A stretch of DNA of 64,000 nt from Macrostomum lignano (taxonomy: Eukaryota), in the NCBI GenBank assembly GCA_002269645.1, contig NIVC01000176.1:770367-834366 (forward strand), in the 5' to 3' direction. The notes under the pieces were generated by a model. The model was given only the letters and a program-made list of their open reading frames with translations. It did not search any database and was not told where the DNA came from. Of this stretch, positions 2,521 to 53,199 are shown in pieces. Positions within the stretch are counted from its first letter, which is position 1, and every line of letters starts with the position of its first letter. The translations under genes and the position numbers were made by a program.

Positions 2521-2613
<93 letters not shown>

Positions 2614-26000: not shown

Positions 26001-28029
26001 TAACTACAGTAAGCTACAGCATACTACAGTAAGCTACAGCATACTACAGTAAGCTACAGCATAACTACAGTAAGCTACAGAATAATACAGTAAGCTAGAG
26101 CATACTACAGTAGGCTACAGCATAACTACAGTAAGCTACAGCATAACTACAGTAAGCTACAGCAAAACTACAGTAGGCTACAGCATAACTACAGTAAGCT
26201 ACAGCATAACTACAGTAAGCTACAGCATAACTACAGTAAGCTACAGCATAACTACAGTAAGCTACAGCATAACTACAGTAAGCTACAGCATACTACAGTA
26301 AGCTACAGCATAACTACAGTAAGCTACAGCATAACTACAGTAGGCTACAGCATAACTACAGTAAGCTACAGCATAACTACAGTAAGCTACAGCATAACTA
26401 CAGTAGGCTACAGCATAACTACAGTAAGCTACAGCATAACTACAGTAAGCTACAGCATAACTACAGTAAGCTACAGCATAACTACAGTAAGCTACAGCAT
26501 ACTACAGTAAGCTACAGCATACTACAGTAAGCTACAGCATACTACAGTAAGCTACAGCATAACTACAGTAAGCTACAGAATAATACAGTAAGCTAGAGCA
26601 TACTACAGTAGGCTACAGCATAACTACAGTAAACTACAGCATAACTACAGTAAGCTACAGCAAAACTACAGTAGGCTACAGCATAACTACAGTAAGCTAC
26701 AGCATAACTACAGTAAGCTACAGCATAACTACAGTAAGCTACAGCATACTACAGTAAGCTACAGCATACTACAGTAAGCTACAGCATACTACAGTAAGCT
26801 ACAGCATAACTACAGTAAGCTACAGAATAATACAGTAAGCTAGAGCATACTACAGTAGGCTACAGCATAACTACAGTAAACTACAGCATAACTACAGTAA
26901 GCTACAGCAAAACTACAGTAGGCTACAGCATAACTACAGTAAGCTACAGCATAACTACAGTAAGCTACAGCATAACTACAGTAGGCTACAGCATAACTAC
27001 AGTAAGCTACAGCATACTACAGTAAGCTACAGCATACTACAGTAAGCTACAGCATACTACAGTAAGCTACAGCATAACTACAGTAAGCTACAGAATAATA
27101 CAGTAAGCTAGAGCATACTACAGTAGGCTACAGCATAACTACAGTAAGCTACAGCATACTACAGTAAGCTACAGCAAAACTACAGTAGGCTACAGCATAA
27201 CTACAGTAAGCTACAGCATAACTACAGTAAGCTACAGCATAACTACATTAGGCTACAGCATAACTACAGTAAGCTACAGCATAACTACAGTAAGCTACAG
27301 CATAACTACAGTAAGCTACAGCATAACTACAGTAAGCTACAGCATAACTACAGTAAGCTACAGCATAACTACAGTAAGCTACAGCATAACTACAGTAAGC
27401 TACAGCATAACTACAGTAAGCTACAGCATACTACAGTAAGCTACAGCATACTACAGTAAGCTACAGCATACTACAGTAAGCTACAGGAAAGCCGGAAGCC
27501 TCACATTAAGCGCTTGACTAGGAGAATAGTTTGAGTCCAGCCAGGCCTCATTGCTCATCAGCTTGGCTCTGGGATCAATGATCAGCACATTCCACTCGGT
27601 GATTGACAGGTTCCTAGCCGCATAGGCGTAGTTCACTGAGCAGGCTAGAACGATTTGAGCCTCGGTGCCGGCGGCCGGCAGCAGGCGGACGACTCGGCCA
27701 CGGATGCTGGCCAGCGGTGATGAGGCGTTGCTAGGCTGCAGCACGGCAACTGAGTAGCTCACGGAGCGGGCGCCGCGCCACCTGGAGCGGCCGCTGCGGA
27801 ACGAGCAAACGAAAGCTGCCGAATCGGGCTTCGGGTTGTCATAGTAACCGAACAGTCTCCGACCTTCGGTTGTGTAGAAAGCCACGGCTGGTGAATGGGG
27901 AACGATTCGTTGGGAGAGATTCGCCGAGCGGGTCGCGGCGACGGCTAGGGCGACAGATTCTTCTGCTCCTAGAAGAGCAGCGAACAGAAACGCCAGCAAG
28001 ACGGCGAAGCAACGATAGCGCTGCTGCAT
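19621..28029 (-). CDS. Gene B: secreted ~820 aa protein with signal peptide, Ig-like domains, a SUEL-like lectin domain and a C-terminal ALK/LTK-type glycine-rich domain
   Basis: Exons (minus strand): 27505-28029, 24716-25015, 23369-23660, 22830-23079, 21902-22113, 21544-21815, 20140-20619, 19621-19752. Phases are consistent and the total is 2463 nt. Signal peptide MQQRYRCFAVLLAFLFAALLGA. Ig signatures VSCQV...FECRA and LSCQA..P.VTYSW...ICCKG. SUEL-like LVCGERSTMGILQVRY...RIEVDYFC. ALK/LTK GR motifs [85 protein letters not shown]. The stop follows YYLDNQC. Confidence 0.85.
19832..20137. repeat. (TAC)n/(TAA)n trinucleotide microsatellite in the last intron of gene B
   Basis: About 100 tac/taa units starting directly at the donor GTGAGTAGTAGT (minus strand). 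Confidence 0.97.
20718..20962. repeat. 48-bp minisatellite (~5 copies)
   Basis: Unit tcccagggatttgccaaggtcatattccaggaattttccagtgtcgtg. Confidence 0.9.
21163..21442. repeat. 40-bp minisatellite (~7 copies)
   Basis: Unit aagaataacaagactgaaccagacagagagggagagagat. Confidence 0.93.
22102..22815. repeat. 34-bp repeat containing the exon-5 acceptor of gene B, grading into an ~18-bp (ccccctccgatccttgac) repeat
   Basis: Unit tgatcactgacccctatcagatccttgacccatc. On the minus strand it reads GATCAG|ATGGGTCAAGGA, as at the true acceptor (22113). Confidence 0.88.
23108..23360. repeat. ~15-16-bp degenerate repeat (ccaattctgtcact core)
   Basis: Repeated ttctgtcactcc motif filling gene B intron 3. Confidence 0.8.
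23735..24703. repeat. Compound minisatellite (tgtcaggagactacagtaga, 20 bp; higher-order ~120-bp blocks; 9-bp tgtcaggga)
   Basis: The tgtcagga core is repeated throughout gene B intron 2. Confidence 0.92.
25185..27486. repeat. 20-21-bp minisatellite (ctacagtaagctacagcataa)n, ~2.3 kb
   Basis: About 110 copies filling gene B intron 1. Confidence 0.97.
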
Positions 28030-28518
28030 GTTGGATGCAGTCTCGAGTATTGGCAGGTGTCTAAAATCTTGAAATTTGAGCGTTTATTAAAGCCCAAATA
28101 GCTGGTTTGGAACAGTAAAATCTTATCTTCTTGCGCAGAATTTCGATGCCAGAAAATTGCCAACCCAATCTGTAAATTTATGACACAGTGATGACACAAG
28201 CAGAAACTCAATATACAGCGCCTACCACTACTAACCTGCGCGTATACATTTAAGGCTAAAAATTCAAACAAATCAGCATGATAAGCTGCGCTTTGAAGTA
28301 AGTTCAGGAAATTTCTGAATTGAAGAAAGTTATTTGACGACGTTTGGAGGAGATGCAAGCAAGACTGATAAGATGCCAATTAGCTGGGGGCAGATGGATA
28401 AGGGGGTGAAGCAATGAAGATTTGTGCGCTCAGAATCTAGATAAGATAGTAAGTTAAAGCCTGTAGGTTTTTGGACTTGGTTGGTTTTTCTATAACAGCT
28501 GAAGAAGCACCAAATTTG

Positions 28519-29177
28519 GGTGTCAGATGGTGCATGGTGTCAGGGTGAATCAATCTGGGTGTCAGATGGTGCATGGTGTCAGGGTGAATCAATCTGGGTG
28601 TCAGATGGTGCATGGTGTCAGGGTGAATCAATCTGGGTGTCAGATGGTGCATGGTGTCAGGGTGAATCAATCTGGGTGTCAGATGGTGCATGGTGTCAGG
28701 GTGAATCAATCTGGGTGTCAGATGGTGCATGGTGTCAGGGTGAATCAATCTGGGTGTCAGATGGTGCATGGTGTCAGGGTGAATCAATCTGGGTGTCAGA
28801 TGGTGCATGGTGTCAGGGTGAATCAATCTGGGTGTCAGATGGTGCATGGTGTCAGGGTGAATCAATCTGGGTGTCAGATGGTGCATGGTGTCAGGGTGAA
28901 TCAATCTGGGTGTCAGATGGTGCATGGTGTCAGGGTGAATCAATCTGGGTGTCAGATGGTGCATGGTGTCAGGGTGAATCAATCTGGGTGTCAGATGGTG
29001 CATGGTGTCAGGGTGAATCAATCTGGGTGTCAGATGGTGCATGGTGTCAGGGTGAATCAATCTGGGTGTCAGATGGTGCATGGTGTCAGGGTGAATCAAT
29101 CTGGGTGTCAGATGGTGCATGGTGTCAGGGTGAATCAATCTGGGTGTCAGATGGTGCATGGTGTCAGGGTGAATCAG
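28519..29177. repeat. 39-bp minisatellite, ~17 essentially identical copies
   Basis: Unit tcagatggtgcatggtgtcagggtgaatcaatctgggtg. It produces the MHHLTPRLIHPDT repeat ORFs. Confidence 0.97.
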
Positions 29178-30105
29178 TTCTGGCAGACTTTGCTACCGAT
29201 ATGTACATGTAGCGCATGAAACTTTGTAAAGGGTATTTAAAATACTTTGATACACGAAAATTTATTAAATAAATTACCTTCAAAAATGAGCTTTCACTTC
29301 TCGGGTACTCCGAGTGTTCCTCTCAAGGTGTCAAAATGTTTTTTGAGTCAACTATCCGTAGATCCGCCGCGGTTTTTAAGTCGTCCCAGCCACAGGAATT
29401 CCGATTGTGTAAACAAATTGAAAATTTCCGGATTTTTTTGTTGTAATTTAAATGAGTAGACAGACATGCGGTACTATATATTGAATATTCAGCAAGCCAA
29501 AAAAGTTCTTTTTACCTTTGGAAAGGAAATAAAATTCTGCAATGAGTCACAGTCTCGCCTTGTGTCGCCCTTCTGACCTGCCTAATTGCACCCTCTCTTG
29601 ACCGAAAAAATTATTTGTTTAAATTATTCCATTTTTTGTTAATCAAAGCACAGTCGAGTCATTGGGGGGGGGTTCGCTTGTCCCATTAGAAATGCGAGAA
29701 TTTCTACCCAACCAGTGAGTTGCCGTGAGTCATGAACTCTACTCTGAAATGCCGAAACTCGCAGCACAAATCACGCGCACAACGCCCATTGCCCAGTGAC
29801 TCGGTGTGACTCAGCGTCTCTGCTCAAACACACTCGATCTTCAAAGTCTTCTTTTGTGCTCAATGAAGGCGACTCAAACCCAATTACGGCTGAGAAATTG
29901 TTTCGGAGAGCGTGGGTTGAAGCGTGAGTGAGTGTTAGCTAAGCTCTTCCGCATTCCGGGGTGTTATTATTTTTTAATTTTATTTTATAGAACAAATATA
30001 CGCCGTCCCTACTGTTAGTAGGAGTTAGTAGCTTGAATAATTGAGTAAGTAGAGTGAATTGACAGCTGTTAATCGAGTTAAATATAGCATTCCCCCAAAC
30101 CAATT

Positions 30106-30481: not shown

Positions 30482-30608
30482 GCCCCTGTCTCTTGCTGGC
30501 GCCTCTGTCTCTTGGTAACGCCTCTGTCTCTTGATGGGCACCCCTGTCTCTTGGTGGGTCACCCCTGGCACCCCTGTCTTTTGGTGGGTCACCCCTGGCA
30601 CCCCTGTC
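30482..30608. repeat. Minisatellite (ggcacccctgtctcttggtgggtcacccct-like), left part, interrupted by the palindromic element
   Basis: The same repeat resumes in the same orientation at 38744-38808. Confidence 0.85.
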
Positions 30609-33600
30609 ACTACTAAGGACTGGCAGATGTGTTGATTTTGGAGGTGGGGTGGGTGTCAACCCTCCTCGCCTCTCATTGGCTGGCGCCCCGATCACTAGGT
30701 GATCGATACCCGTATCGATATCGGCGCTCGGCGCGCGCGCGCCGCAGGCGCGTGGCGCCAAGCGCCGCAGGCGCACCCTCCCGATATTAGATCCCAATAA
30801 ATCAATCAGACCCCAAATCAATCAGATCCCAAATCAATCAGATCCCAAATCAATCAGATCCCAAGCGCACCCTCCTGAGCCGCAGACGCCCATGCCGCAG
30901 GCGCCCCGAGTGTACACTCTCCCGAGCCAAAGGTACACTCTCCCCAGTACACTCTCCCCAGTACACTCTCCCGATATGTACACTCTCCCACTCTCCCGAT
31001 ATGGGTGTACACTCGCCCAATACAGGTGTACACTCTCCCGATATGTAGTCAACGATACGTACCCCGCAGGCACCCTATACCTCACGCCCTGCCCCCACCT
31101 AGCCTCTTCCCCTCTCTCACCCACATCTCAACTAGCGAAATCGAACCCAGGTCGCGCCCATACTAGGCCACTACACGGTTTGGGGGTATAGGGAGCGAGA
31201 AGTTTTAACCCTGATGCTGACGCAGCCCTGTACAGTGAGCGTGTACGGGCAGAGAGGGGTGGGGCGGACAGAGAACCAGCCACTAGGTTGTTATACTGTT
31301 GAAGCATAGGGAGCGAGAAGTTTTAACCCCGATGCTGACGCAGCCCTGTACAGTGAGCGTGTACGGGCAGAGGGTGGGTGGAAAGAGATGTGAATAACAC
31401 AGCCTGCTGCAGGAGCCGGATAGAGAGGCGCATGCTAGGACAGAGAGACAGTGTGAGTCACACACACACCCACAGAGAGAGCCGTACAGAGGATAGAGAG
31501 CTCCCTCCCCAGTTGCAGGGGACAGAGAGGCAGGCAGGGTATGCAGGGGCATGCGAACAGTCAAGGGGCCACGCGAGGATAGAATGGAGGAGCAGAGATG
31601 TGTATGGACAGAGAGCAGGCCACGCGTGCGTAGTGTGAGGGAACAGAAACATATGGAGCAGGAGGGAGATAGGAAGCAAACGCGCAGGGTAAGGGAGCCA
31701 CACAGGGCGGTACAGTGAGACACGGGCAGGGGTGGAGCCGTGCGTGGACAGAGCTGAACGGCATGGTCAGCTGCAGGAATAGGATGATAGAGAGGCGCGG
31801 ATAGGAGGGACAGAGAGCAGTGTGCAGGGGTAGGCAGCCACGCTGGCAGGGAACAGAGGCGCGTGTAGCCAGTTGCAGCCCGGGACAGAGAAGTGTGAAG
31901 GGGGCCTGGGACAGAGTTCCGAGCAAGGCACAGAGAGGTAGGGTCCGGTAGCCATGTATAGACAGGGACCCACGCGAGGGCAGGACAGGGGAGTAGACAT
32001 GCAAGTTGCATGCAAGGCCAGAGAGGTGTGCGCGGAGGGTGACAGAGAGCAGTGTGTAGGGGTAGGTAACAGCAAACTTTAGTAGAGGTGCGTGCGGGGA
32101 CGGAGAAACCAGTCTGAGCGTACAGAGACGTTACAGAGAGGTACACAAACAGAGAACAAAGCGAGCAGAGCACATGTGTAGGCGCAGAGACGTGAGGGAG
32201 AATCGACCAAAACACGCTATGTATTATCAAAAGTTGGTTTTAGTGCAGCATATTTAATAGTGGGTAGTATAATAGTATGTACATAGTAGGTATAATGGTA
32301 GTAATAATAGTAAGTATATTAGCCCAAAAGGTAGGCTAAAACAGGCTAAACTGTGTGTACGCATCCTCATCACCCCACAAGCCCCCTCTCCCGCCAGATT
32401 CACTCTTCCAAACCCTCCTGTATTGCTGTATGAAGGAAAATATAGTGTAAAAATACAGATGTTAACCGTCAGACCGCTGAAATCAGGGCACACTAGAGGG
32501 GGTTTCGGGTCTGCATGCTCTATGTAAGCTGCTTGAGGAGGTTCCAAGGGCGTTGTGAGGGTTTCCATTATGTTTTGAAAAAACTAGGGGCTTAAATACA
32601 ACGTTTTATTCAAAAAGTAGGTTATTTTAATGAAATAGCTGACACAATCATTGTCGAGAGTAGAAATTTTTATAAGAAACCAGGCATTTTAGCAAAAATA
32701 AACCTTCAAACCACATAAAATTGAATAAAAAGCAGACATTTTCAATTATAAACCGCAAGTATTTTAATAGAAAAGTAAGCAAACAAGGCACAAAAGCAGC
32801 AAATTTTACCTTTTTTATTTTAATGTTACTGTTAAGGTAGAGAGTAGAAACTTGTGAGCTGTACGGAGTTAGAAAGTATTAACCATTATGTATCGTATGA
32901 ATTATTAGTTCAGTACCAGCCATTGGTCAAGCGAGCATTTATGAAGTTATTACGAGTGATGAAGGGATAGAGAGCTATATACAGGAAGACAGTATCCTTC
33001 TAAACCACCACGAACAGATTGCTAATACAGATAAGCTTTGTCTGTGTGCAGTATGAGTAAGCGAAGGCGGGGCAAATACTTTTCCACATGCCGGACAGAA
33101 CAGTATTGTGCTAGGATTTCTCTCGAAATCGCGGTACGTTACTAGTTTTTATCACACCATCCAGATGCGTCAACTAGTCAGCAGTAGTCATTTATATGTT
33201 ATTAGAACTTACAAACCCAGGTCAGGTAAATATTACAAAGAGTATATTACGTACACACGCCAACTCCGAATACCAAGCCATACTAGTCTACTTGCAGTGC
33301 TCCTGGAGGGAAGGGACGGTCAAGAGTTACACACCAAGAATGCATTCACACAAAGAGTACACCACTCGAGCCCCGTCCATGCGCCCCGATATGTATGACG
33401 CAGGCAACCCTCCCGACATGTATGCCGCAGGCGACCCTCCCGACATGTACCCAACATGTATGTCGCAGGCGACCCTACTCACATGTACCCCGACATGTAC
33501 ACCCTACCAAATGGCACTCGAGCCACAGGTGCCAAGCGGCCCCCGAAATGTACGCCGCGGGCGCCCCCCCCCTCCCGAGCCGAAGGTACACTCTTCCAAT

Positions 33601-36600
33601 ATGAGTGTACACTCTCCCAATACAAGTGTACACTCTCCCAATATGAGTGTACACTCTCCCGATATGAGTGTACATCGATTTGTAGTCAACAATACCTATT
33701 AACACAAAATTAGGCTAGTGAAAACTACTTATAGTAGGTGAAATTGCGTATATTTACGTAAAAAGTAAGCAAAACACATATTAATCACATCAGTAGGTGT
33801 AAATATCAGGGCATAATACATATTACGAAACATATAGGTGTACGGACATATAGAATTAAGCATATGGACAGCAAAAACACACAATGTAGGTGCATTTTAT
33901 CGATATTTTGGCAGAAAAGTAGGTGAAATAGACAAAATAGTAGGTATAATACACAGAACCTACTCATTAGTGTAGTAGGCGCTTGTAGATGCTAGTATAT
34001 TGTAAAACATAGGTTGAAATACACATACGCACAGTAGATACAAGTATAATGCAGGTGCATATGCACACACTGTAGATTCGAATTATGTAGATGCATAGGC
34101 TAAAATACACACATCGTAGAGACAGAAGCAGGCATAATGCAGGAAAATTATGATACATATTAGTGCGTAAAGTATCATATTATGACACGCTGTAGCACAT
34201 ATTGACATAATGCAGGGGAAAATATTGACAGAAATAGTACACAATTGTAGAGGTAACAACCCGCCAACTAGTAAGGGCATCCAGCACTTGTTCAGGTTTT
34301 TATTATTTCGAGACGAGTGTCATGCCCCCGCAAGAGATCTTGTGTTTGTGTTTGTGTGTGTGTGTGTGTGTGTTTGTTTGTGTACATTGTGTACATTTGC
34401 GTACATGTGGTCCTATATACCGGAAATTGCGTACATTTATGCGTACAATTATGTCTATGCGCTACATTGTGTGTAGTTCGTTGCCCTGCGTTTGTAAATA
34501 CAGTTTAGTCCGTGCACTGCATTGATGCCTACTTTTGTGTTAGGTACCTGCTTTTTATTAAATACACTGCACCAAAAGCAACTTTAATCGGTACATACTG
34601 TGTTTTTGTAGAGGTGCCGGTATGCTTTTTAATACATATGTCTTTAGTGTAATTTGGTGTGCTTCAACTTGGCTCGCGAATCTTGCACTATAGCTCTCTA
34701 GTGGAAAGTACTCTTACTTGTGCTGGCTGCAGGTGATAGTAAGGCTTTCTGCTTGACTTCTTTAGTTTACTTGATGGTTAAATGAGGAGTGGGAGCTGAC
34801 GCGCCTACCTCGGGGAGGAATGCAGCCCCACGGTCTGGTGCAGTGCAGCGCTTTCTGTTATCCCTCTCCGTCCGCACTGTACTTGGTCTCCGCTAGGATC
34901 ACCCCTTGGGGTTAAGAGTGGGCGGGTCCTTTGTACTCGACCCTGGGTTAAAAACTCGCATTTGGAGGCTCTGGGGAGAGTTGCAGTGGAGTTCAACAAA
35001 TTTCTGATAAGATCTCTTGCGGGGGCATGACACTCGTCTCGAAATAATAAAAACCTGAACAAGTGCTGGATGCCCTTACTAGTTGGCGGGTTGTTACCTC
35101 TACAATTGTGTACTATTTCTGTCAATATTTTCCCCTGCATTATGTCAATATGTGCTACAGCGTGTCATAATATGATACTTTACGCACTAATATGTATCAT
35201 AATTTTCCTGCATTATGCCTGCTTCTGTCTCTACGATGTGTGTATTTTAGCCTATGCATCTACATAATTCGAATCTACAGTGTGTGCATATGCACCTGCA
35301 TTATACTTGTATCTACTGTGCGTATGTGTATTTCAACCTATGTTTTACAATATACTAGCATCTACAAGCGCCTACTACACTAATGAGTAGGTTCTGTGTA
35401 TTATACCTACTATTTTGTCTATTTCACCTACTTTTCTGCCAAAATATCGATAAAATGCACCTACATTGTGTGTTTTTGCTGTCCATATGCTTAATTCTAT
35501 ATGTCCGTACACCTATATGTTTCGTAATATGTATTATGCCCTGATATTTACACCTACTGATGTGATTAATATGTGTTTTGCTTACTTTTTACGTAAATAT
35601 ACGCAATTTCACCTACTATAAGTAGTTTTCACTAGCCTAATTTTGTGTTAATAGGTATTGTTGACTACAAATCGATGTACACTCATATCGGGAGAGTGTA
35701 CACTCATATTGGGAGAGTGTACACTTGTATTGGGAGAGTGTACACTCATATTGGAAGAGTGTACCTTCGGCTCGGGAGGGGGGGGGCGCCCGCGGCGTAC
35801 ATTTCGGGGGGCCGCTTGGCACCTGTGGCTCGAGTGCCATTTGGTAGGGTGTACATGTCGGGGTACATGTGAGTAGGGTCGCCTGCGACATACATGTTGG
35901 GTACATGTCGGGAGGGTCGCCTGCGGCATACATGTCGGGAGGGTTGCCTGCGTCATACATATCGGGGCGCATGGACGGGGCTCGAGTGGTGTACTCTTTG
36001 TGTGAATGCATTCTTGGTGTGTAACTCTTGACCGTCCCTTCCCTCCAGGAGCACTGCAAGTAGACTAGTATGGCTTGGTATTCGGAGTTGGCGTGTGTAC
36101 GTAATATACTCTTTGTAATATTTACCTGACCTGGGTTTGTAAGTTCTAATAACATATAAATGACTACTGCTGACTAGTTGACGCATCTGGATGGTGTGAT
36201 AAAAACTAGTAACGTACCGCGATTTCGAGAGAAATCCTAGCACAATACTGTTCTGTCCGGCATGTGGAAAAGTATTTGCCCCGCCTTCGCTTACTCATAC
36301 TGCACACAGACAAAGCTTATCTGTATTAGCAATCTGTTCGTGGTGGTTTAGAAGGATACTGTCTTCCTGTATATAGCTCTCTATCCCTTCATCACTCGTA
36401 ATAACTTCATAAATGCTCGCTTGACCAATGGCTGGTACTGAACTAATAATTCATACGATACATAATGGTTAATACTTTCTAACTCCGTACAGCTCACAAG
36501 TTTCTACTCTCTACCTTAACAGTAACATTAAAATAAAAAAGGTAAAATTTGCTGCTTTTGTGCCTTGTTTGCTTACTTTTCTATTAAAATACTTGCGGTT

Positions 36601-38743
36601 TATAATTGAAAATGTCTGCTTTTTATTCAATTTTATGTGGTTTGAAGGTTTATTTTTGCTAAAATGCCTGGTTTCTTATAAAAATTTCTACTCTCGACAA
36701 TGATTGTGTCAGCTATTTCATTAAAATAACCTACTTTTTGAATAAAACGTTGTATTTAAGCCCCTAGTTTTTTCAAAACATAATGGAAACCCTCACAACG
36801 CCCTTGGAACCTCCTCAAGCAGCTTACATAGAGCATGCAGACCCCGAAACCCCCTCTAGTGTGCCCTGATTTCAGCGGTCTGACGGTTAACATCTGTATT
36901 TTTACACTATATTTTCCTTCATACAGCAATACAGGAGGGTTTGGAAGAGTGAATCTGGCGGGAGAGGGGGCTTGTGGGGTGATGAGGATGCGTACACACA
37001 GTTTAGCCTGTTTTAGCCTACCTTTTGGGCTAATATACTTACTATTATTACTACCATTATACCTACTATGTACATACTATTATACTACCCACTATTAAAT
37101 ATGCTGCACTAAAACCAACTTTTGATAATACATAGCGTGTTTTGGTCGATTCTCCCTCACGTCTCTGCGCCTACACATGTGCTCTGCTCGCTTTGTTCTC
37201 TGTTTGTGTACCTCTCTGTAACGTCTCTGTACGCTCAGACTGGTTTCTCCGTCCCCGCACGCACCTCTACTAAAGTTTGCTGTTACCTACCCCTACACAC
37301 TGCTCTCTGTCACCCTCCGCGCACACCTCTCTGGCCTTGCATGCAACTTGCATGTCTACTCCCCTGTCCTGCCCTCGCGTGGGTCCCTGTCTATACATGG
37401 CTACCGGACCCTACCTCTCTGTGCCTTGCTCGGAACTCTGTCCCAGGCCCCCTTCACACTTCTCTGTCCCGGGCTGCAACTGGCTACACGCGCCTCTGTT
37501 CCCTGCCAGCGTGGCTGCCTACCCCTGCACACTGCTCTCTGTCCCTCCTATCCGCGCCTCTCTATCATCCTATTCCTGCAGCTGACCATGCCGTTCAGCT
37601 CTGTCCACGCACGGCTCCACCCCTGCCCGTGTCTCACTGTACCGCCCTGTGTGGCTCCCTTACCCTGCGCGTTTGCTTCCTATCTCCCTCCTGCTCCATA
37701 TGTTTCTGTTCCCTCACACTACGCACGCGTGGCCTGCTCTCTGTCCATACACATCTCTGCTCCTCCATTCTATCCTCGCGTGGCCCCTTGACTGTTCGCA
37801 TGCCCCTGCATACCCTGCCTGCCTCTCTGTCCCCTGCAACTGGGGAGGGAGCTCTCTATCCTCTGTACGGCTCTCTCTGTGGGTGTGTGTGTGACTCACA
37901 CTGTCTCTCTGTCCTAGCATGCGCCTCTCTATCCGGCTCCTGCAGCAGGCTGTGTTATTCACATCTCTTTCCACCCACCCTCTGCCCGTACACGCTCACT
38001 GTACAGGGCTGCGTCAGCATCGGGGTTAAAACTTCTCGCTCCCTATGCTTCAACAGTATAACAACCTAGTGGCTGGTTCTCTGTCCGCCCCACCCCTCTC
38101 TGCCCGTACACGCTCACTGTACAGGGCTGCGTCAGCATCAGGGTTAAAACTTCTCGCTCCCTATACCCCCAAACCGTGTAGTGGCCTAGTATGGGCGCGA
38201 CCTGGGTTCGATTTCGCTAGTTGAGATGTGGGTGAGAGAGGGGAAGAGGCTAGGTGGGGGCAGGGCGTGAGGTATAGGGTGCCTGCGGGGTACGTATCGT
38301 TGACTACATATCGGGAGAGTGTACACCTGTATTGGGCGAGTGTACACCCATATCGGGAGAGTGGGAGAGTGTACATATCGGGAGAGTGTACTGGGGAGAG
38401 TGTACTGGGGAGAGTGTACCTTTGGCTCGGGAGAGTGTACACTCGGGGCGCCTGCGGCATGGGCGTCTGCGGCTCAGGAGGGTGCGCTTGGGATCTGATT
38501 GATTTGGGATCTGATTGATTTGGGATCTGATTGATTTGGGGTCTGATTGATTTATTGGGATCTAATATCGGGAGGGTGCGCCTGCGGCGCTTGGCGCCAC
38601 GCGCCTGCGGCGCGCGCGCGCCGAGCGCCGATATCGATACGGGTATCGATCACCTAGTGATCGGGGCGCCAGCCAATGAGAGGCGAGGAGGGTTGACACC
38701 CACCCCACCTCCAAAATCAACACATCTGCCAGTCCTTAGTAGT
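30609..38743. mobile_element. 8135-bp giant palindromic (foldback) element with ~3.73-kb TIRs, 6-bp TSD and ACTACT/AGTAGT termini; non-autonomous Polinton/Maverick-like (family assignment inferred)
   Basis: Left arm 30609-34341 is the reverse complement of right arm 35009-38743. Mirror ORFs have coordinate sums of 69352/69351/69350, and the only differences I noticed are two 1-bp homopolymer indels. Spacer 34342-35008. CCTGTC at 30603-30608 and 38744-38749. No transposase, polymerase or integrase ORF is recognisable. Confidence 0.85.
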
Positions 38744-39775
38744 CCTGTCTCTTGGTGGGTCACCCCTGGCACCCCTGTCTCTTGGTGGGCGCCCCTGTCT
38801 CTTGGTGACTGCAGCACCATAATAAGTTGCCTGCTAAACTAAAGACACGATAGAAACGCTTGTTTCAGCAAAAACTCAAGTATATTTTAGTACTTCTGGG
38901 AAGCAAGATAACTTTTAGCTCGCACTTAACCTTAAAACCCAGGATTTCGCTAATTCCAACGCTACTATATACTTCTCAACCCCACAATTCGGTATGCCAT
39001 ATACATATCTTCGCCTCTCCAACAAAATCGACCTAATTCTTAAAATAACTTATGAAAAGTTAAATGCACTCCAATAATTCGTTGAATTATAGTTTTATTA
39101 GTTTAATGTAAACACGCTCAAATTTTATTTGTATTGTTGCACAAAGTGCTTGCTGAGCAAATAACTTTTGCTCAACAATTTGTGTGTACGATTGGCATCA
39201 TATTATTCAAGCATGAAAAAGGATGGATCAAGTTATAGATAAAATATATAATAAACAGAACAAGGCAGCAATTAACCAATAGATAGAGAAATTTCATGAA
39301 GTTTTTCTTAAGCAGATAAGTTTTAGTTAACACACAACACAACAAATAAACAGTTTTGGAAGTGAATTTTGACTGAGTTATTTATTATTTAATGAGCAAT
39401 TCTAGCAATTCCAGAAGTTCCAGTATCATGCAAGAGTCTAATAGTCTTTTAGTACTCTCAAGGGAGAGAGATTAAGCAACAATACCAACCCTTCACTAAC
39501 GTACATACCCCAGTCCAGTTGAAATGTACATATAAAATCCACTAGAACAGTGTACAATCAACTCTTCGATCGATATAGTAGCTTAAACCTCTTTAGTCTT
39601 AAATTAGAGTGATAGGAGTTTAAAAAATTGAATCACACTGTACACATTGATTTAGACTATCAGTGGCAAGCTGAAACTCTCCCCTCAAATGTACACTCTC
39701 GGATCCCTGGCCTAATGTACATTGAAGCGGGCACCCGGCTTGCTCGGGCCTATAAAACCTCTTTTTAACTCTTTA

Positions 39776-40291: not shown

Positions 40292-43200
40292 TCAGGCAAT
40301 CAATACCCCATCGGTGTAGCCCTCTCTATCGATAGAGACAATCTCTTCCAGCTCTTCTCGTTTAGCCGCAGCCGCCGCCGCGGCCATACTGGCATCAATT
40401 CGCTGGCGTAGAAAGCCGCGCCAAAGAGTCTTCAGCTGAGAATTAGGCGCCTCCAGCAGCAAAACCCGTCGACAGCCGACGTTGCCTCCGTCACCGAAGA
40501 CAAGTCGGATTAGCAATCGTGAATCGAAGCTGGCCTCCAGACAGTCGGCCAGACGGAAGACTTCGCCAGCCAATGTTGACGTTATTACTGATGTCGGTGA
40601 CGGCGAACCAACGGATGTCAAGCAGAGTCGGTCGGTCAGTAGGACGCCGCGAACTGGCAAGTCGACACCGCCGCTGCCGCTGCTCCGCCAGACCAGCTCG
40701 CCGGAGAAGACTACAGCATGCTGCTGGACAGGGGACAACGACGATGCCGAATGATCACGACGATGATTCGACGAAACTTGCCGGATTGGCGGAGTCGGCG
40801 GAGGCGTCGGCAGGCGAACTCGCTCCGGCTCAGGCAAGAGGCTGGCGCAGTGCTCCAAGGCCTGGGCGACATCTTCAACAAACAGGTGGTCGGCGTCCGC
40901 CTCTGGAGTGGCGGCCAGCAGAGCGGAGAAATCCGATGCCAGAGTCTTCAGGTGTCGAAGCGGTTTAATTAGACTGGCGTTCAACGAAGGCAGGTCCGGC
41001 CGTTCGCGCGCGGCGGATTCCAAAGCGGCCAAGAACTCCGGACAGGCGTGCAGGCCCCTGAGGGCACGCGGACAAGCGTCGGACAGGTGGGCGCCGAAGT
41101 CTCGATAGTCGTCGCATAGTTGAAACAGGCGCGAGCGGAAAACCCGGCCGAGACAGTCGGCAGGGTGAGTTGGATCGATCTGGATCGGAGGGAGTATGTA
41201 ATCTAACTTGAGCACGCCTGAACTACGATGCGCATATTAAGCGACAGTTGCAATCACTTGTCAGCCTTTAAAATGTCTAGACTAAAGTGTTCTATATGAA
41301 AAGAACGTACGACAAATATTTCGATCTGGAACACCGTGCTTGTGACAGGGAAAGTTTTAGTTCAGACGTACTTTAAGGATGATAGGGATGGCTTAAACTA
41401 CTCGTAAAGAACGTGTCGTTCCTTGAAAATTTGAACGACGCGTCCTTGAGAGGGACACTTTGAACTGGGACGCATCCTTGTCAGTGACACTTTGAACTGG
41501 GACGCATCCGTGTCAGTGACACTTTGAACTGGGACGCATCCGTGCCAGTGACACTTTGAACTGGGACGCATCCGTGCCAGTGACACTTTGAACTGGGATG
41601 CATCCTTGACAGTGACACTTTGAACTGGGACGCATCCTTGTCAGTGACACTTTGAACTGGGACGCATCCGTGTCAGTGGCACTTTGAACTGGAACCCATC
41701 CGTGTAAGTGACACTTTGAACTGGGACGCATCCGTGTCAGTGGCACTTTGAACTGGGACGCATCCGTGTCAGTGACGCTTTGAACTGGGACGCATCCGTG
41801 TCAGTGGCACTTTGAACTGGGACGCATCCTTGTCAGTGACACTTTGAACTGGGACGCATCCGTGTCAGTGGCACTTTGAACTGGGACGCATCCTTGTCAG
41901 TGACGCTTTGAACTGGGACGCATCCGTGTCAGTGGCACTTTGAACTGGGACGCATCCGTGTCAGTGACGCTTTGAACTGGGACGCATCCGTGTCAGTGGC
42001 ACTTTGAACTGGGACGCATCCTTGTCAGTGACACTTTGAACTGGGACGCATCCGTGTCAGTGGCACTTTGAACTGGGACGCATCCGTGTAAGTGACACTT
42101 TGAACTGGGACGCATCCGTGTCAGTGGCACTTTGAACTGGGACGCATCCTTGTCAGTGACACTTTGAACTGGGACGCATCCGTGTCAGTGGCACTTTGAA
42201 CTGGGACGCATCCTTGTCAGTGACACTTTGAACTGGGACGCATCCGTGACAGTGACACTTTGAACTGGGACGCATCCGTGTCAGTGGCACTTTGAACTGG
42301 GACGCATCCTTGTCAGTGACACTTTGAACTGGGACGCATCCGTGTAAGTGACACTTTGAACTGGGACGCATCCTTGACAGTGACACTTTGAACTGGGACG
42401 CATCCGTGTCAGTGACACTTTGAACTGGGATGCATCCGTGTCAGTGACACTTTGAACTGGGATGCATCCTTGACAGTGACACTTTGAACTGGGACGCATC
42501 CTTGACAGTGACACTTTGAACTGGGATGCATCCGTGTCAGTGACACTTTGAACTGGGATGCATCCTTGACAGTGACACTTTGAACTGGAACCCATCCGTG
42601 TCAGTGACACTTTGAACTGGAACCCATCCGTGTCAGTGACACTTTGAACTGGGACCCATCCGTGTCAGTGACACTTTGAACTGGGACCCATCCGTGTCAG
42701 TGACACTTTGAACTGGGACCCATCCGTGTCAGTGACACTTTGAACTGGGATGCATCCTTGACAGTGACGCTTTGAACTGGGGCCCATCCGTGCCAGTGGC
42801 TGTCAGAACTAGAGATATTTGACCTATAAAAATACCTTAAGTTTTAGAGCCAAGGAACGTCATAACTCGCGACTTGTCATAATCGCCTGCCTACAAACTG
42901 GATACGCTTCCAACTAAGGCCCATCCATGAAAGTGGCCTAACTCGCTTCATACGACGTCTGCTTCTCTTACCAGTCTCAGAATCTGCTTGGTGGTGTCAA
43001 TCAGCTGGTCGAAACGGTGAAACAGCGCCGAGCAGAGCTGCGGCCCCAGACTGCCAACCAGCCTGCGCCGGTAAAACTGCTGACAGGCGGTCATCTCAGC
43101 GGCGAACGCTTCTTCGCGATTGAAAATTTGATTCGCTAAAGATTGGCGCGAATGCGGCGGCGGCGCCGGAGGCGTCTGAAGCTGTAACTGCGGCTTTTGA

Positions 43201-46200
43201 GGCGGCGTTTTTGGCGGCTCGGCGATCATTGCTTCGTAGGCCCGATTGTGGCAGTAGGTCTGACCACCCCCCGGGCCCGGGCCCCGCGCTGGCACAGTAG
43301 ATGACAGGGCCAACCGGCCTAGCATAGTCACCGCGTTGCCGCCACCGCTTCCGCTTCCGCTGCTCTCGTAGCCGCCGTGCCCGTTGGCCGGCGCGTCGAC
43401 CAGCCATCGTTGGATTCGAAGTTCTAATCGGCTGCCGCTTCGTCTGAAGAGCAAGAATTTGCATTTTTTTGTTTGAGAATTATTAACTTTTTACACAAAT
43501 AATCGCTACACACTACTACTGATGAAAGTAGAAATAAGCGGATAACGACAATAGCAGACTTTTTGTTAGGAATAGAGTAACTTTTTAGTCTCGTATCATT
43601 TCGGAGCGGCAGTTTTTTACATCAAGATTCATGCAGGTCATGGCTGCGGGCCAGATTGCATAGAAGATGAGAGAGAGGAGGAAAGACAAGATAGATGAGA
43701 TGAGGGGAGAGGCGAGAGATGAGATGAGAGAGAAGATAAGATAAGAGGAGACTAGAGAAGAGAGGTGACATGAGAGAGATAAGATGGAAGAGAAGAGAAG
43801 AGAAGAGAGGGTAGAAGAGGAGAGAAGAGAGAAGAGAAGATGAGAGAAGAGGAGAGAAGAGAGGAGTGAAGAGAAGAGAAGAGGAGAGAAGAGGAGAGAA
43901 GAGGAGAGAAGAGAGGAGAGAAGATGAGAGAAGAGGAGAGAAGAGAGTAGAAGAGGAGAGAAGAGAGTAGAAGAGGAGAGAAGAGAGGAGAGAAGGGAGT
44001 AGAAGAGGAGAGAAGGGAGTAGAAGAGGAGAGAAGAGAGGAGAGAAGAGAGTAGAAGAGGAGAGAAGATGAGAGAAGAGGAGAGAAGAGAGGAGAGAAGA
44101 TGAGAGAAGAGGAGAGAAGAGAGGAGAGAAGAGAGTAGAAGAGGAGAGAAGATGAGAGAAGAGGAGAGAAGAGAGGAGAGAAGATGAGAGAAGAGGAGAG
44201 AAGAGAGGAGAGAAGATGAGAGAAGAGGAGAGAAGAGAGTAGAAGGGGAGAGAAGAGAGGAGAGAAGAGAGTAGAAGAGGAGAGAAGAGAGTAGAAGAGG
44301 AGAGAAGATAGGAGAGAAGAGAGTAGAAGAGGAGAGAAGAGAGTAGAAGAGGAGAGAAGATAGGAGAGAAGAGAGTAGAAGAGGAGAGAAGATAGGAGAG
44401 AAGAGAGTAGAAGAGGAGAGAAGATAGGAGAGAAGAGAGTAGAAGAGGAGAGAAGATAGGAGAGAAGAGAGTAGAAGAGGAGAGAAGATAGGAGAGAAGA
44501 GAGTAGAAGAGGAGAGAAGATAGGAGAGAAGAGAGTAGAAGAGGAGAGAAGATAGGAGAGAAGAGAGTAGAAGAGGAGAGAAGATAGGAGAGAAGAGAGT
44601 AGAAGAGGAGAGAAGAGAGGAGAGAAGAGAGTAGAAGAGGAGAGAAGATGAGAGAAGAGGAGAGATGAGAGGAGAGAAGATGAGAGAAGAGGAGAGAAGA
44701 GAGGAGAGAAGATGAGAGAAGAGGAGAGAAGAGAGTAGAAGAGGAGAGAAGAGAGTAGAAGAGGAGAGAAGATAGGAGAGAAGAGAGTAGAAGAGGAGAG
44801 AAGAGAGTAGAAGAGGAGAGAAGATAGGAGAGAAGAGAGGAGAAAAGGAGAGAAGATAGGAGAGAAGAGAGTAGAAGGGGAGAGAAGAGAGGAGAGAAGA
44901 GAGTAGAAGAGGAGAGAAGAGAGTAGAAGAGGAGAGAAGATAGGAGAGAAGAGAGTAGAAGAGGAGAGAAGAGAGTAGAAGAGGAGAGAAGATAGGAGAG
45001 AAGAGAGTAGAAGAGGAGAGAAGAGAGGAGAGAAGAGAGTAGAAGAGGAGAGAAGAGAGGAGAGAAGAGAGTAGAAGAGGAGAGAAGAGAGCTGAGAAGA
45101 GACACAAAACTTAAGCGACCCGGAGTTGGTCAAACCTGGCACTAACTCGTAGATATTGTTAAATTAAATTAAATTAGAAAAAACCAGTATACGTTTGCAT
45201 TAGAATTGAGCAGAAAATGACTCGAACTAACGAGCTAAACCATACAGAATACAAGTATAGAAGTTACAGGAGAATTTGCTTGAAATCGACTGCACAGTTC
45301 TGATTGACTGTGAAAGCAGAAAAATGGTGTCAAAAAGGATTCAAAGCAATGCATCCTTGTCTATAGCTTGACATGCTAACATCCTATTTTGGTCAGCAAT
45401 GGCCTGTTTGTTTTTATATTGTCTTTGTTCATAGTTGAGCGTTCTTTTGCATAGATAAATACTGAATATATAGTCTTTGTTTCTCGAAGAAGACCTACAA
45501 GTTCATTTCATCCTTTGTTTTCTTGATGAACTAACTTATCACAAACTCATCGTCATCACAAAGCTGCTGGTCTTTGTTTTGCTTATTTTCCATCTATCTG
45601 TCTATATGCCAAAGTAGCGCGCGACCGTTATTACTGTAAACATACCAAGCTACTTCCATATGGTAATCATATTTCCATTTCAACTTAAATCACTGACCGC
45701 TTCATTTTTCTGAGGTCACTTTAGGGGCCGCTTTGAGGTCATTAAAGGGCCGCTTTCAGGTCACTAAAGGGCCGTTTTGGGGTCACTTAATGGCCGTTCT
45801 TTTAGGTCACTTAAGGGCCGTTTTTGGGGTAACTTAAGTGCCAATTTTTGAGGTCACTTAAGGGCCGTTTGGGGTAACTTAAGGGCCAATTTTTGAGGTC
45901 ACTTAAGGGCCGTTTGGGGTAACTTAAGGGCCAATTTATGAGGTCACTTAAGGGCCGTTTGGGGTCACTTAAAGGCCGCTCTTTGAAGCCACTTTTGGGG
46001 GCACTTTGGGGTCACGTTAGGGGCTGTTTTGGTATTACTTTAGGGGCATAAAAATATATATTTATTTTGAATAAAAAGACAATGTTTCCCAACTCTTCAC
46101 CGCCAACTTATCTCAATTATCCTATCTAATCTTACCATCAGAAAACTTCAAATCTCAATTATCCTATCTAATCTTACCATCAGAAAACTTCAAATCTCAA

Positions 46201-52200: not shown

Positions 52201-53199
52201 CCCTACAAAATGACACCTGTCCCTACAAAATGACACCTGTCCCTACAAAATGACACCTGTCCCTACAAAATGACACCTGTCCCTTCAAAATGACACCTGT
52301 CCCTACAAAATGACACCCATCCCGACCCTACAAAATCACACTCTATCTTCAAAATTGACACTTTTCTACTTAAAATGGCATTAGTCTCGTGTCTTTTAAA
52401 GATTGCATTCGTTTCTTCAACATGACAAATTCCATTTCTCTGAGTTCTCTCACCGTTCTTTGCTCAGTTCTGCCGCCGCCTCCGCCACCACCGCCGCCAT
52501 TTTCGACCACTGCGCTTCCCTCGCCGACGCCGCCGTTGCCGCAGGCTTTGAGTCTCGCGACATCTCCTTGCGCGGCGCCCAGCGGCAGCGGGACGTTGTT
52601 GGCAGCGACTCCAGCCGCCGCTTGCGCCGGAGGCGGGGCCGCCCAGCTCCAGCCCTCGTCCAGCACGTAGGGATCCTCCTGGAACCGTTTTCTCAGGCCG
52701 GCCATCATTGAGATTGCGCTGGAAGTGGAACAAAAAGGTGGCATTGTCCGATCGCTAGATTGGGTAAACAGCTGGAGTAACTATACCTGTACTTCTATGG
52801 GCAGATAGCTCGTTATCAAATAAGTACTCCTGCTACTCAAGTTTATAGTGCTTTTTTAAATTGCAAATGTTCTTAGAAAAATGGCACCCCTGTTTTCTAC
52901 AAAATGGCACCCAGACACAAAGGTCTTTGATAAAAAATGGCCACTTTTCAAACAAAAAAATGGCACCCCTTCGCGTCAAAGTCCCGCACTCACGAGTCCC
53001 GCCTCCCCTGCCCGCCCGCGCCGCCCGCCGCTTTCGTCGAGGTCCTCCTGGCCTGCACGCCGTTAGCAGTCACGTGATCTGCCGCCGACGGCTCCTCAAT
53101 GCCGTCGGCCGAAGACGCCGCTGACGAACCCGACGATCGCCCAGCTTGGAAGCAGCTCAGCGGGCGGAGCACCCGGCGAACCCGCTGGGCCCGAGACAT
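40292..53199 (-). CDS. Gene C: PDZ-DH(RhoGEF)-PH domain protein, ~674 aa
   Basis: Exons (minus strand): 52994-53199, 52454-52718, 49362-49555, 42972-43443, 40292-41179. Phases are consistent and the total is 2025 nt. [57 protein letters not shown]...[14 protein letters not shown] is assembled across three exons. [21 protein letters not shown]...[16 protein letters not shown]...LGRVF...[21 protein letters not shown]...[12 protein letters not shown]...[18 protein letters not shown]. The start codon choice is uncertain. Confidence 0.85.
41448..42800. repeat. 32-bp minisatellite (gtgacactttgaactgggacgcatccgtgtca)n, ~42 copies
   Basis: Fills gene C intron 4. Confidence 0.96.
43662..45092. repeat. 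Polypurine (AG-rich) compound microsatellite, ~1.4 kb
   Basis: gaagaggagagaagagagta-type units. Confidence 0.95.
45712..46030. repeat. Degenerate ~22-bp repeat (ggtcacttaagggccgtttggg)
   Basis: About 13 diverged copies. Confidence 0.8.
46110..46487. repeat. 42-bp minisatellite, ~9 near-identical copies
   Basis: Unit tctcaattatcctatctaatcttaccatcagaaaacttcaaa, period 42. Confidence 0.95.
46987..48115. repeat. Polypyrimidine-rich compound repeat (ctcactctctccccatct)
   Basis: About 1.1 kb of CT-rich units. Confidence 0.95.
48188..49241. repeat. Polypurine (gagaggagag)-type microsatellite
   Basis: About 1.05 kb, almost entirely A/G. Confidence 0.95.
49750..50357. repeat. 33-bp minisatellite (gatactgacttccctgtgtcagacagtcatgta), ~18 copies
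   Basis: Gives the [11 protein letters not shown] repeat ORF; intronic in gene C. Confidence 0.93.
50935..51285. repeat. 16-bp minisatellite (aaatttaggtcctatg)n
   Basis: About 20 copies. Confidence 0.95.
51785..52322. repeat. 20-bp minisatellite (ccctacaaaatgacacctgt)n
   Basis: About 26 copies near the exon-2 donor of gene C. Confidence 0.95.

What the first reader, a model, noticed from the sequence alone, without database searches (positions are those of the whole stretch)
30609..38743. 8.1-kb near-perfect palindromic mobile element with 3.7-kb TIRs: candidate copy-back (defective-interfering-like) satellite of a Polinton/Maverick-type virus
Seen: two ~3.73-kb inverted arms cover 92% of the element, apparently differing only by two homopolymer indels. 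There is a 667-bp spacer, tandem-trinucleotide termini (5'-ACTACTAAGG...CCTTAGTAGT-3'), a 6-bp TSD and no enzyme-coding ORF. Established: a 6-bp TSD with short terminal tandem repeats is the hallmark of Polintons/Mavericks (retroviral-like integrase plus protein-primed polB with slide-back initiation). Their usual ends are AGTAGT/AG, so the ACTACT polarity is atypical, and their TIRs are normally far shorter. Inference: this is a non-autonomous panhandle genome made by template switching, with one end of a helper element copied back onto itself, as in copy-back defective viral genomes. It would still be integrated in trans, and could be a new class of giant foldback parasite of an undescribed helper family. 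If transcribed it would form a 3.7-kb dsRNA hairpin, a potential siRNA/piRNA source against the helper.
Basis: partly seen in the sequence, partly recalled or inferred. Interest (0 to 1): 0.92.

Follow-up and report, generated by a model that had tools for sequence, protein, structure and literature searches.

The report
Giant foldback transposon in a flatworm
An 8.1-kb non-coding mobile element made almost entirely of two identical 3.7-kb inverted arms has inserted into a minisatellite in the flatworm Macrostomum lignano. It is built like a classic foldback transposon, but its 6-bp target duplication and tandem-trinucleotide tips have the form reported for Maverick/Polinton virus-like elements.

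Summary
The arms are 30609-34341 and 35009-38743 (3,733 and 3,735 nt) with no mismatches and two 1-nt homopolymer indels. There is a 667-nt loop and a 6-bp TSD (CCTGTC). Removing the element and one TSD copy restores the host's 30-bp minisatellite register. The tips are a trinucleotide repeated twice. No coding signal was found.

The window is the last 64 kb of contig NIVC01000176.1 of the Macrostomum lignano Mlig_3_7 assembly. The structure cannot be a read or assembly palindrome artefact, because symmetry stops exactly at the TSD.

The anatomy is that of a foldback element: a unique tip, tandem-repeat domains with a 12-mer repeated 11 times per arm, an inner domain and a non-coding middle. 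One diverged relative of the inner arm exists elsewhere in the genome.

The end form (6-bp TSD plus a tandem-repeat hexamer beginning with A) matches what is published for vertebrate Mavericks, although the letters differ. So a Maverick-type helper is the leading candidate (about 0.45), but it is unproven. Another DDE transposase is nearly as likely (about 0.38).

Verdict: a new variant of a known kind, of moderate interest.

The parts
30603..30608 (.). Left copy of the 6-bp target-site duplication (CCTGTC), inside a host 30-bp-unit minisatellite (30482-30608)
30609..34341 (+). Left arm (3,733 nt) of the palindrome
   Evidence: no mismatches against the right arm and two 1-nt homopolymer indels
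30609..30614 (+). Terminal hexamer, a trinucleotide repeated twice (mirror copy at 38738-38743). It begins with A and its mirror ends with T.
   Evidence: Tandem di/tri hexamers make up 2.8-4.5% of positions locally. The same form is reported for Maverick ends.
30609..30798 (+). Unique GC- and CpG-rich tip domain with small palindromes at 30702-30719 and 30724-30774 (mirror 38554-38743). Corresponds to the foldback 'flanking domain'.
30799..30864 (+). 16-bp tandem repeat, 4.1 copies (mirror 38488-38553)
30894..31061 (+). Module M1: 14-bp and 21-bp tandem repeats carrying 7 copies of the 12-mer GTACACTCTCCC, all in one orientation (mirror 38291-38458). Candidate protein-binding array.
31188..31381 (+). 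Two 76-nt direct repeats, 96% identical: 31188-31262 and 31306-31381 (mirror 37971-38164)
31400..32210 (+). Purine-rich (68-72%) low-complexity stretch rich in ACAGAG. It holds the spurious 315-aa open frame on the opposite strand (mirror 37142-37952).
32211..33350 (+). AT-rich non-coding domain (mirror 36001-37141)
33351..33700 (+). Module M2: 27/38-bp repeats plus a 21-bp repeat (4.2 copies) with 4 copies of the same 12-mer. An old internal duplicate of M1: 33554-33698 against 30894-31061, 69% identity (mirror 35650-36000).
33701..34334 (+). Inner AT-rich domain (mirror 35016-35649). A diverged relative (about 81% identity, many indels) lies in contig NIVC01001431.1 next to a KDZ transposon insertion.
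34335..34340 (.). Self-complementary hexamer AGATCT at the inner end of the left arm. Its twin at 35010-35015 is the only other AGATCT in the element. Unexplained.
34342..35008 (.). Asymmetric non-coding loop or middle domain, 667 nt (669 nt if bounded by the AGATCT pair). It starts with a (TG)n run. It has no TIRs, no other copy and no unusual fold.
35009..38743 (-). Right arm (3,735 nt), the reverse complement of the left arm
38744..38749 (.). Right copy of the 6-bp TSD (CCTGTC). The host minisatellite continues in register to about 38807.

Best explanation
This is a real, evolutionarily recent insertion of a non-autonomous, non-coding mobile element with foldback architecture. It lies in Macrostomum lignano at contig NIVC01000176.1, about 800,975-809,109.

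Shown: it entered a host minisatellite as one unit, duplicating 6 bp. Both of its ends are the same sequence in inverted orientation. It encodes nothing recognisable, so it must be moved by an enzyme supplied in trans. Each arm carries a unique tip followed by arrays of a reiterated 12-mer, which are candidate binding sites.

Inferred: the enzyme is an integrase or transposase of the RNase-H (DDE) class that cuts the target with a 6-bp stagger. The tips are a trinucleotide repeated twice, begin with A, and abut a 6-bp TSD. That is the form published for Maverick/Polinton ends, where the repeat is thought to allow 'jumping back' in protein-primed replication. The most likely helper is therefore a Maverick/Polinton-type element of this genome. 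If so, the element is a foldback satellite of that helper, using its integrase and perhaps its replication.

Also inferred: the palindrome arose by inverted duplication of one end of an already non-coding parent element, not of a helper genome. The arms are identical either because this happened recently or because they are homogenised by intramolecular conversion.

Sub-probabilities: real mobile foldback-type insertion, about 0.9. Maverick-type helper given that, about 0.5.
For: Insertion as a unit:
- The TSD fits only at 6 bp, and the host 30-bp period is restored only when exactly 6 bases are removed.
- Symmetry stops exactly at the TSD.

Non-coding:
- The 315-aa frame has no homologue among 5.8 billion proteins.
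- Of 82 six-frame pieces, one gave a Pfam match at E = 0.008, where about 0.8 is expected by chance, and none matched PHROGs.
- The exhaustive HMMER search returned only translated tandem repeats.

Foldback anatomy:
- Tip, tandem-repeat domains, inner domain and non-coding middle.
- The 12-mer occurs 11 times per arm in one orientation and once elsewhere in the window.
- There is an internal duplicate of TIR sequence, as described for Tetris.

Maverick form of the ends (PMC8097293):
- That paper reports perfect 6-bp TSDs and conserved 6-bp end motifs made of tandem di- or trinucleotides.
- It lists three types, all starting with A and ending with T, and interprets them as serving jumping-back.
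- Locally such hexamers are only 2.8-4.5% of positions.

Other 6-bp-TSD superfamilies fit worse: IS3EU/GingerRoot need TA..TA termini, which are absent here.

Mavericks are reported as abundant in planarian flatworms.

The parent was probably already non-coding: a relative of the inner arm at 81% identity sits on another contig.
Against: - No helper was seen. The window has no pPolB, Polinton-type integrase, ATPase, protease or capsid gene. No paper documents Mavericks in Macrostomum.
- The letters of the end motif are not any of the three published types. They are the reverse complement of the commonest one.
- The arms are about 2.5 times longer than the longest Maverick TIR reported: 1,447-1,500 bp.
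- Reiterated subterminal motifs and foldback shape are the classic signature of cut-and-paste DDE transposons. Most foldbacks are assigned to Mutator.
- Only one full copy and one partial diverged relative were seen in about 180 kb of M. lignano sequence. TSD length and end motif therefore rest on a single insertion.
Confidence: 0.45

Rival explanations
1. It is a foldback-type non-autonomous cut-and-paste transposon of a DDE superfamily unrelated to Mavericks: a Mutator/Foldback, hAT-like or still undescribed lineage whose transposase happens to make 6-bp duplications. On this view the tandem-trinucleotide tip is a coincidence. The 12-mer arrays are transposase-binding sites. The long identical arms come from TIR elongation and conversion, as in FB, Galileo or Tetris.
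For: The architecture matches the foldback description point by point. The foldback shape is known to evolve independently in several superfamilies through loss of the transposase and elongation of the TIRs. MuDR relatives span TSDs of 4-10 bp. The end motif has a 3-4.5% chance expectation, which is not negligible. DDE transposons such as KDZ are active in this genome.
Against: Described foldbacks give TSDs of 7-10 bp, not 6. IS3EU/GingerRoot, the named cut-and-paste group with 6 bp, needs TA..TA termini. The neighbouring KDZ transposon has an unrelated terminus. The conjunction of a 6-bp TSD, a tandem-repeat hexamer and a 5' A is what is published for Mavericks.
Confidence: 0.38
2. One reading: a copy-back, defective-interfering-like genome. 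One end of an autonomous Maverick/Polinton-type helper was copied back on itself by template switching, so the arms are helper sequence.
For: The whole element is one end in inverted duplicate around an asymmetric loop. The ends have the Maverick form. That strand-displacing, protein-primed replicons can yield defective genomes with long inverted terminal duplications is recalled from general knowledge and was not tested here.
Against: Mavericks are gene-dense, with TIRs of at most about 1.5 kb. A terminal 4.4 kb should therefore contain genes, yet none of 82 six-frame pieces matches any polymerase, integrase, ATPase, protease or capsid family. The arm is a mosaic of tandem repeats and low-complexity DNA. 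Its inner part belongs to an older non-coding repeat family.
Confidence: 0.07
3. It is an assembly or sequencing artefact (a palindromic chimeric long read or a mis-join), and the real locus has only one arm.
For: Mlig_3_7 is a Canu assembly of early PacBio data for a very repetitive, partly duplicated genome. Only about 64% of its bases were scored error-free by REAPR. The only differences between the arms are homopolymer indels typical of long-read consensus errors.
Against: An artefactual palindrome continues its symmetry into the flank and has no long unique centre. Here symmetry ends exactly at the element tips. The host minisatellite resumes in register after a 6-bp duplication. A 667-nt asymmetric loop sits in the middle. 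The element lies deep inside an 834-kb contig, with unique sequence on both sides.
Confidence: 0.03

Closest known systems
Foldback transposons (Drosophila FB; Tetris; Galileo/Kepler/Newton; Tm1 of root-knot nematodes)
   Same: Very long TIRs make up most of the element. The TIR is built from a unique flanking domain, tandem-repeat domains and an inner domain. The middle domain is short and non-coding. Part of the TIR is duplicated inside the TIR. The element is non-autonomous.
   Different: The arms, at 3.7 kb, are longer than in the described families: up to 1,735 bp in Tetris and about 0.76 kb in the near-complete Galileo copy of D. willistoni. The two arms are identical. The TSD is 6 bp, not 7-10 bp. 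The tips are a tandem trinucleotide.
Maverick/Polinton virus-like elements
   Same: A perfect 6-bp TSD. A terminal hexamer made of a short unit in tandem, beginning with A and ending with T. Terminal inverted repeats.
   Different: There are no genes at all, whereas Polintons are defined by pPolB plus integrase. The size is 8.1 kb, against 12.7-25 kb. The TIRs are 3.7 kb, against 46-1,500 bp. The letters of the end motif are not one of the published types. No helper was found.
IS3EU / GingerRoot DNA transposons
   Same: 6-bp TSD.
   Different: Their complete families have TA..TA (occasionally TG..CA) termini and short TIRs. This element has A-C...G-T tips and 3.7-kb TIRs.
Copy-back / snap-back defective genomes of viruses and one-ended palindromic MITEs
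   Same: Both halves are the same end in inverted orientation around a small asymmetric loop.
   Different: The arms contain no helper sequence that can be recognised. The element is chromosomally integrated with a TSD. The comparison rests on general knowledge and was not tested here.

Membership tests
Maverick/Polinton | [quoted passage not shown] | tested here: not met
   No such domain in any of 82 six-frame pieces of arm plus loop, nor in 90 long pieces of the rest of the window. A non-autonomous derivative would not need them, so this excludes autonomous membership only.
Maverick/Polinton | Virion module (major and minor capsid proteins, packaging ATPase, maturation protease) | tested here: not met
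   no match
Maverick/Polinton | 6-bp target-site duplication (range 5-8 bp) | tested here: met
   CCTGTC; the only fitting length is 6. Definition.
Maverick/Polinton | Conserved terminal 6-bp motif made of a tandem di- or trinucleotide | tested here: inconclusive
   The form is met: a trinucleotide repeated twice, with 5' A and 3' T. The letters match none of the three types listed in PMC8097293 and are the reverse complement of the commonest one.
Maverick/Polinton | Size 12.7-25 kb with TIRs of 46-1,500 bp | tested here: not met
   8,135 bp with 3,733/3,735-bp TIRs
Maverick/Polinton | An autonomous element with the same ends exists in the same genome (needed to call this its satellite) | not testable with these tools
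   No M. lignano genome can be searched by DNA here. Scans of viral and metagenome contigs were negative or gave chance hits.
Foldback elements (structural class) | Long TIRs composed of flanking, tandem-repeat and inner domains, around a short non-coding middle domain | tested here: met
   definition
Foldback elements (Mutator/Foldback or P/Galileo lineages) | TSD of 9 bp (FB), 8-10 bp (Tetris) or 7-8 bp (Galileo). The 9-bp FB value is recalled from general knowledge; the others are. | tested here: not met
   The TSD is 6 bp
IS3EU/GingerRoot | 6-bp TSD together with TA..TA (rarely TG..CA) termini | tested here: not met
   TSD met; termini not met
Copy-back defective genome of a helper | The arms are colinear with one end of the helper genome, including its terminal genes | tested here: not met
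   No gene remnant in 4.4 kb. The helper sequence itself is unavailable, so colinearity could not be examined directly.

The most novel reading that the evidence does not exclude
The element is a non-coding foldback 'satellite' of a still undescribed Maverick/Polinton-type element of macrostomid flatworms. It would be integrated by that helper's integrase, and its tandem-trinucleotide tips could let it be copied by the helper's protein-primed polymerase. This would be the first hyper-TIR, gene-less parasite of a Maverick. It would add a new end-motif type and show that foldback architecture can also evolve on self-synthesising elements. If transcribed through, it would be a 3.7-kb hairpin source of small RNAs.
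Probability: 0.4. Interest if true: 0.7.

Novelty: new variant of a known kind. Interest (0 to 1): 0.5.

Why it matters
Foldback transposons are known mainly from Mutator- and P-type lineages, with TSDs of 7-10 bp. A foldback element carrying Maverick-form ends would link two fields: foldback transposons and virus-like self-synthesising elements. It would also give a compact sequence probe, the terminal ~200 bp, for finding the helper in a regeneration model organism whose DNA transposons are essentially uncharacterised (3% of the genome, with no class breakdown published). Long perfect palindromes are also hotspots for rearrangement and potential sources of hairpin RNA. That matters for anyone interpreting structural variation or small-RNA clusters in this highly repetitive, neopolyploid genome. 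If the helper turns out to be an ordinary DDE transposase, the element is simply an unusually large and clean foldback with a rare TSD length.

Tried and rejected
1. ORF handles to pull other copies from protein-indexed assemblies. The 315-aa frame has no homologue. Ten window ORFs are not on record. The reason is that the GenBank annotation excluded transcripts overlapping repeats.
2. Exact scans with the terminal 21-mer found nothing in IMG/VR or JGI metagenomes. A scan for the 12-mer at its 21-bp period gave 4 loci, all of them unrelated short tandem repeats.
3. A search with the adjacent host exon, aimed at reaching a homeologous empty site, gave no hit. The annotated gene is probably the 713-aa PDZ protein, which lies outside the search's length filter.
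4. KDZ transposon as mobiliser. Its terminus is unrelated, and its right end and TSD could not be read because of an assembly gap.
5. I first took the AGATCT pair at the loop edges as a footprint of snap-back priming and then withdrew that. Junction microhomology is invisible in any copy-back product, whatever its sequence. The pair fits either a central insertion with a 6-bp TSD or chance (p about 0.02-0.04). The loop shows no feature of an inserted element.
6. Nested insertion of a smaller related foldback inside a larger one is rejected. A nested TSD would break the perfect symmetry, and no internal terminus-like sequence exists.
7. The exhaustive HMMER search with the piece spanning module M2 found only translated tandem repeats.
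8. No tRNA or Rfam family was found: ARAGORN gave 0, and the best Rfam hit had E = 0.12.

Slips, declared. The Maverick end motifs I discuss come only from the text of PMC8097293 and are described here in words. Separately, a slicing bug printed the whole of locus L008, which is raw public sequence as it stands.


Full report
OBSERVATION. The inverted repeat is exactly as described. Three gap-free blocks of 100% complementarity join into arms of 3,733 nt (30609-34341) and 3,735 nt (35009-38743). The arms have no mismatches and two single-base indels, both in homopolymer runs. The arms make up 91.8% of the 8,135-bp element. The loop between them is 667 nt. The element begins ACTACTAAGG and ends CCTTAGTAGT. 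The terminal 23-mer occurs nowhere else in the window.

The hexamer CCTGTC flanks both ends. Of all lengths from 2 to 11, only 6 gives a direct repeat. Deleting the element plus exactly 6 bases restores the 30-bp periodicity of the host minisatellite (74 of 90 matches, against 51-57 for any other offset). It is the only large palindrome in a window otherwise packed with minisatellites.

WHERE IT IS. A KDZ-transposase ORF in the window is 100% identical to a Macrostomum lignano protein. Tracing the members of that protein's cluster recovered a locus identical to the window. That places the window as the last 64 kb of contig NIVC01000176.1 (834,366 bp) of assembly GCA_002269645.1 (Mlig_3_7), with the element at about 800,975-809,109. 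Mlig_3_7 is a Canu assembly of PacBio reads polished with Illumina data. Its GenBank annotation excluded transcripts overlapping repeats, which explains why none of the element's open frames is on record. The two differences between the arms are the kind of error such assemblies make, so the arms may in truth be identical.

IS IT AN ARTEFACT? No. A chimeric palindromic read or a mis-join would carry the symmetry on into the flank and would have no long unique centre. Here symmetry ends at the last base of the element, the host repeat continues in register after a 6-bp duplication, and the centre is a 667-nt asymmetric loop. The palindrome therefore existed before this integration and was inserted as a unit.

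WHAT IT IS MADE OF. From the tip inward, each arm has the following domains:
- a 190-bp unique, GC- and CpG-rich domain with small palindromes
- a 16-bp repeat (4 copies)
- module M1, with 14- and 21-bp repeats
- two 76-nt direct repeats
- about 0.8 kb of purine-rich low-complexity sequence
- about 1.1 kb of AT-rich sequence
- module M2, an old (69% identity) internal duplicate of M1
- about 0.6 kb of AT-rich sequence.
The 12-mer GTACACTCTCCC (one mismatch allowed) occurs 11 times per arm, always in the same orientation relative to the tip, and once in the other 56 kb of the window. It is a good candidate for a reiterated protein-binding site.

Nothing is coding:
- The longest frame (315 aa) sits in the low-complexity stretch and has no homologue.
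- Of 82 stop-to-stop pieces from all six frames of arm plus loop, one matched Pfam at E = 0.008, where about 0.8 is expected by chance, and none matched PHROGs.
- An exhaustive HMMER search found only translated tandem repeats from unrelated sequences.
- There is no tRNA or Rfam family.

RELATIVES. No eukaryotic genome could be searched by DNA. Scans of viral and metagenomic contigs were empty or gave chance hits. By luck, one of the loci fetched through the KDZ protein does carry a relative. This is L001, on contig NIVC01001431.1. Immediately outside the KDZ transposon's left end it has 486 bp that align to the inner arm (33696-34190) at about 81% identity with many indels. The arm is therefore at least partly drawn from an older, diverged, non-coding repeat family. 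The perfect identity of the two arms reflects recent formation or homogenisation, not slow evolution. Five further M. lignano loci (about 120 kb) hold no copy of the tip, of the modules or of the loop.

THE LOOP. AGATCT, a self-complementary hexamer, occurs only twice in the element, exactly at the two edges of the loop. About 2% of arm hexamers are self-complementary. I first read this as a snap-back footprint and then withdrew that, because microhomology at a copy-back junction merges into the inverted repeat whatever its sequence. The pair would fit a 669-bp insertion with its own 6-bp TSD at the exact centre of a once-perfect palindrome. However, the loop has no TIRs, no terminal repeats, no other copy and no unusual fold. 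It also shares the arm's short GTACA-type motifs. I leave it as unexplained, with chance at about 0.02-0.04.

HOW IT MOST LIKELY WORKS. Shown: it is a gene-less element with two identical ends that was integrated with a 6-bp staggered cut. Inferred: it is moved in trans.

TSD length tends to be conserved within a superfamily and so can indicate it (PMC10045372). Six bp is characteristic of Polintons and of IS3EU/GingerRoot. It lies within the 4-10 bp range of MuDR relatives and the 3-6 bp range of retroviral-type integrases. IS3EU/GingerRoot are excluded by their TA..TA termini.

PMC8097293 reports that vertebrate Mavericks combine perfect 6-bp TSDs with conserved terminal hexamers made of a di- or trinucleotide in tandem. 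It describes three types, one of them newly found. All start with A and end with T, and the authors interpret them as allowing jumping-back during protein-primed replication. The element's tip has exactly this form. Its letters match none of the three types; they are the reverse complement of the commonest one.

Against the local background such hexamers are 2.8-4.5% of positions. The conjunction of a 6-bp TSD, a tandem-repeat tip and a 5' A is therefore fairly specific.

Against a Maverick reading:
- The foldback shape and subterminal motif arrays are the hallmark of cut-and-paste DDE transposons (PMC4079207).
- The arms are about 2.5 times the longest Maverick TIR on record.
- No Polinton gene is in the window.
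- Mavericks are reported in planarians but not in Macrostomum.
I therefore put a Maverick-type helper at about 0.45 and another DDE transposase at about 0.38.

THE COPY-BACK CLAIM. Some inverted duplication of one end must have produced a molecule whose two ends are the same sequence. In that generic sense 'copy-back' is reasonable. The specific claim, that the arms are the end of a helper virus-like genome, is not supported. Mavericks are gene-dense with TIRs of at most about 1.5 kb, so 4.4 kb from one end should include genes. None is detectable, and the sequence is a repeat mosaic with an old non-coding relative elsewhere. The parent was more likely an already non-coding element. Foldback architecture is known to arise repeatedly through loss of the transposase and elongation of the TIRs.

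COMPARISON AND NOVELTY. Structurally this is a foldback element. By its ends it resembles a Maverick. It meets the definition of neither family in full (see the membership table). I class it as a new variant of a known kind: an unusually large, perfectly symmetric foldback with a 6-bp TSD and Maverick-form tips in a flatworm. The dsRNA and small-RNA idea is untested.

LIMITS AND SLIPS. Everything about TSD length and end motif rests on one insertion. The helper is unseen. A functional mobilisation test is referred and not described.

Noticed in passing
window 53552-64000 (runs off the contig end); L001, L006, L007, L009, L011: A multicopy transposon at least 20 kb long that encodes a B-box/CxC/KDZ transposase. 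Its left end (CAGTTTATGG...) is shared by six loci, each with a different upstream flank. Inside that end it carries a minisatellite of about 5 kb with a roughly 158-bp unit. In some copies a SET-domain gene lies downstream. The right end and TSD could not be read.
   Followed up: partly
L001 and L006 (contig NIVC01001431.1, 58,779-102,823): Two KDZ transposon copies lie tail-to-tail on the same contig around a run of Ns. This is either a real inverted pair or a scaffolding problem in a repeat.
   Followed up: no
window 34335-34340 and 35010-35015: The self-complementary hexamer AGATCT occurs only at the two edges of the loop, so it is at once part of the inverted repeat and a direct repeat flanking the loop. 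It could be a central insertion with a 6-bp TSD, or chance (about 2-4%).
   Followed up: partly
window 40292-41215 and 42948-43454 (minus strand); window 51331-53316: Two open frames look like real exons and, by eye, resemble a DH/PH (RhoGEF-like) region, although Pfam gives no match. The assembly's annotation calls a 713-aa PDZ-domain gene starting near 53316 on the same strand. If these are one gene, its stop lies about 1.5 kb from the element's right end.
   Followed up: partly
window 2294-4117 (+): An open frame with an integrase H2C2 zinc-binding domain and an rve core: an LTR-retrotransposon pol fragment, not the Polinton type, which lacks the HHCC motif.
   Followed up: no
whole window, e.g. 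5838-7050, 11559-12900, 13025-13800, 14543-15300, 25233-27400, 28357-29319, 41341-42900, 43634-45100, 47132-49400, 49650-50441, 51680-52426: An extraordinary density of minisatellite arrays (periods 8-39 bp), producing long spurious ORFs and extreme strand skews. This agrees with published figures of about 15% simple and tandem repeats in this genome.
   Followed up: no
window 27481-28029 (minus strand): A 182-aa ATG-initiated frame with a signal-peptide-like N-terminus. It may be the first exon of a secreted protein. It is not on record as a gene.
   Followed up: no
window 31130-31185 (and its mirror): By eye, a stretch resembling the T-arm/B-box part of a tRNA on the minus strand. ARAGORN and Rfam report nothing.
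   Followed up: partly
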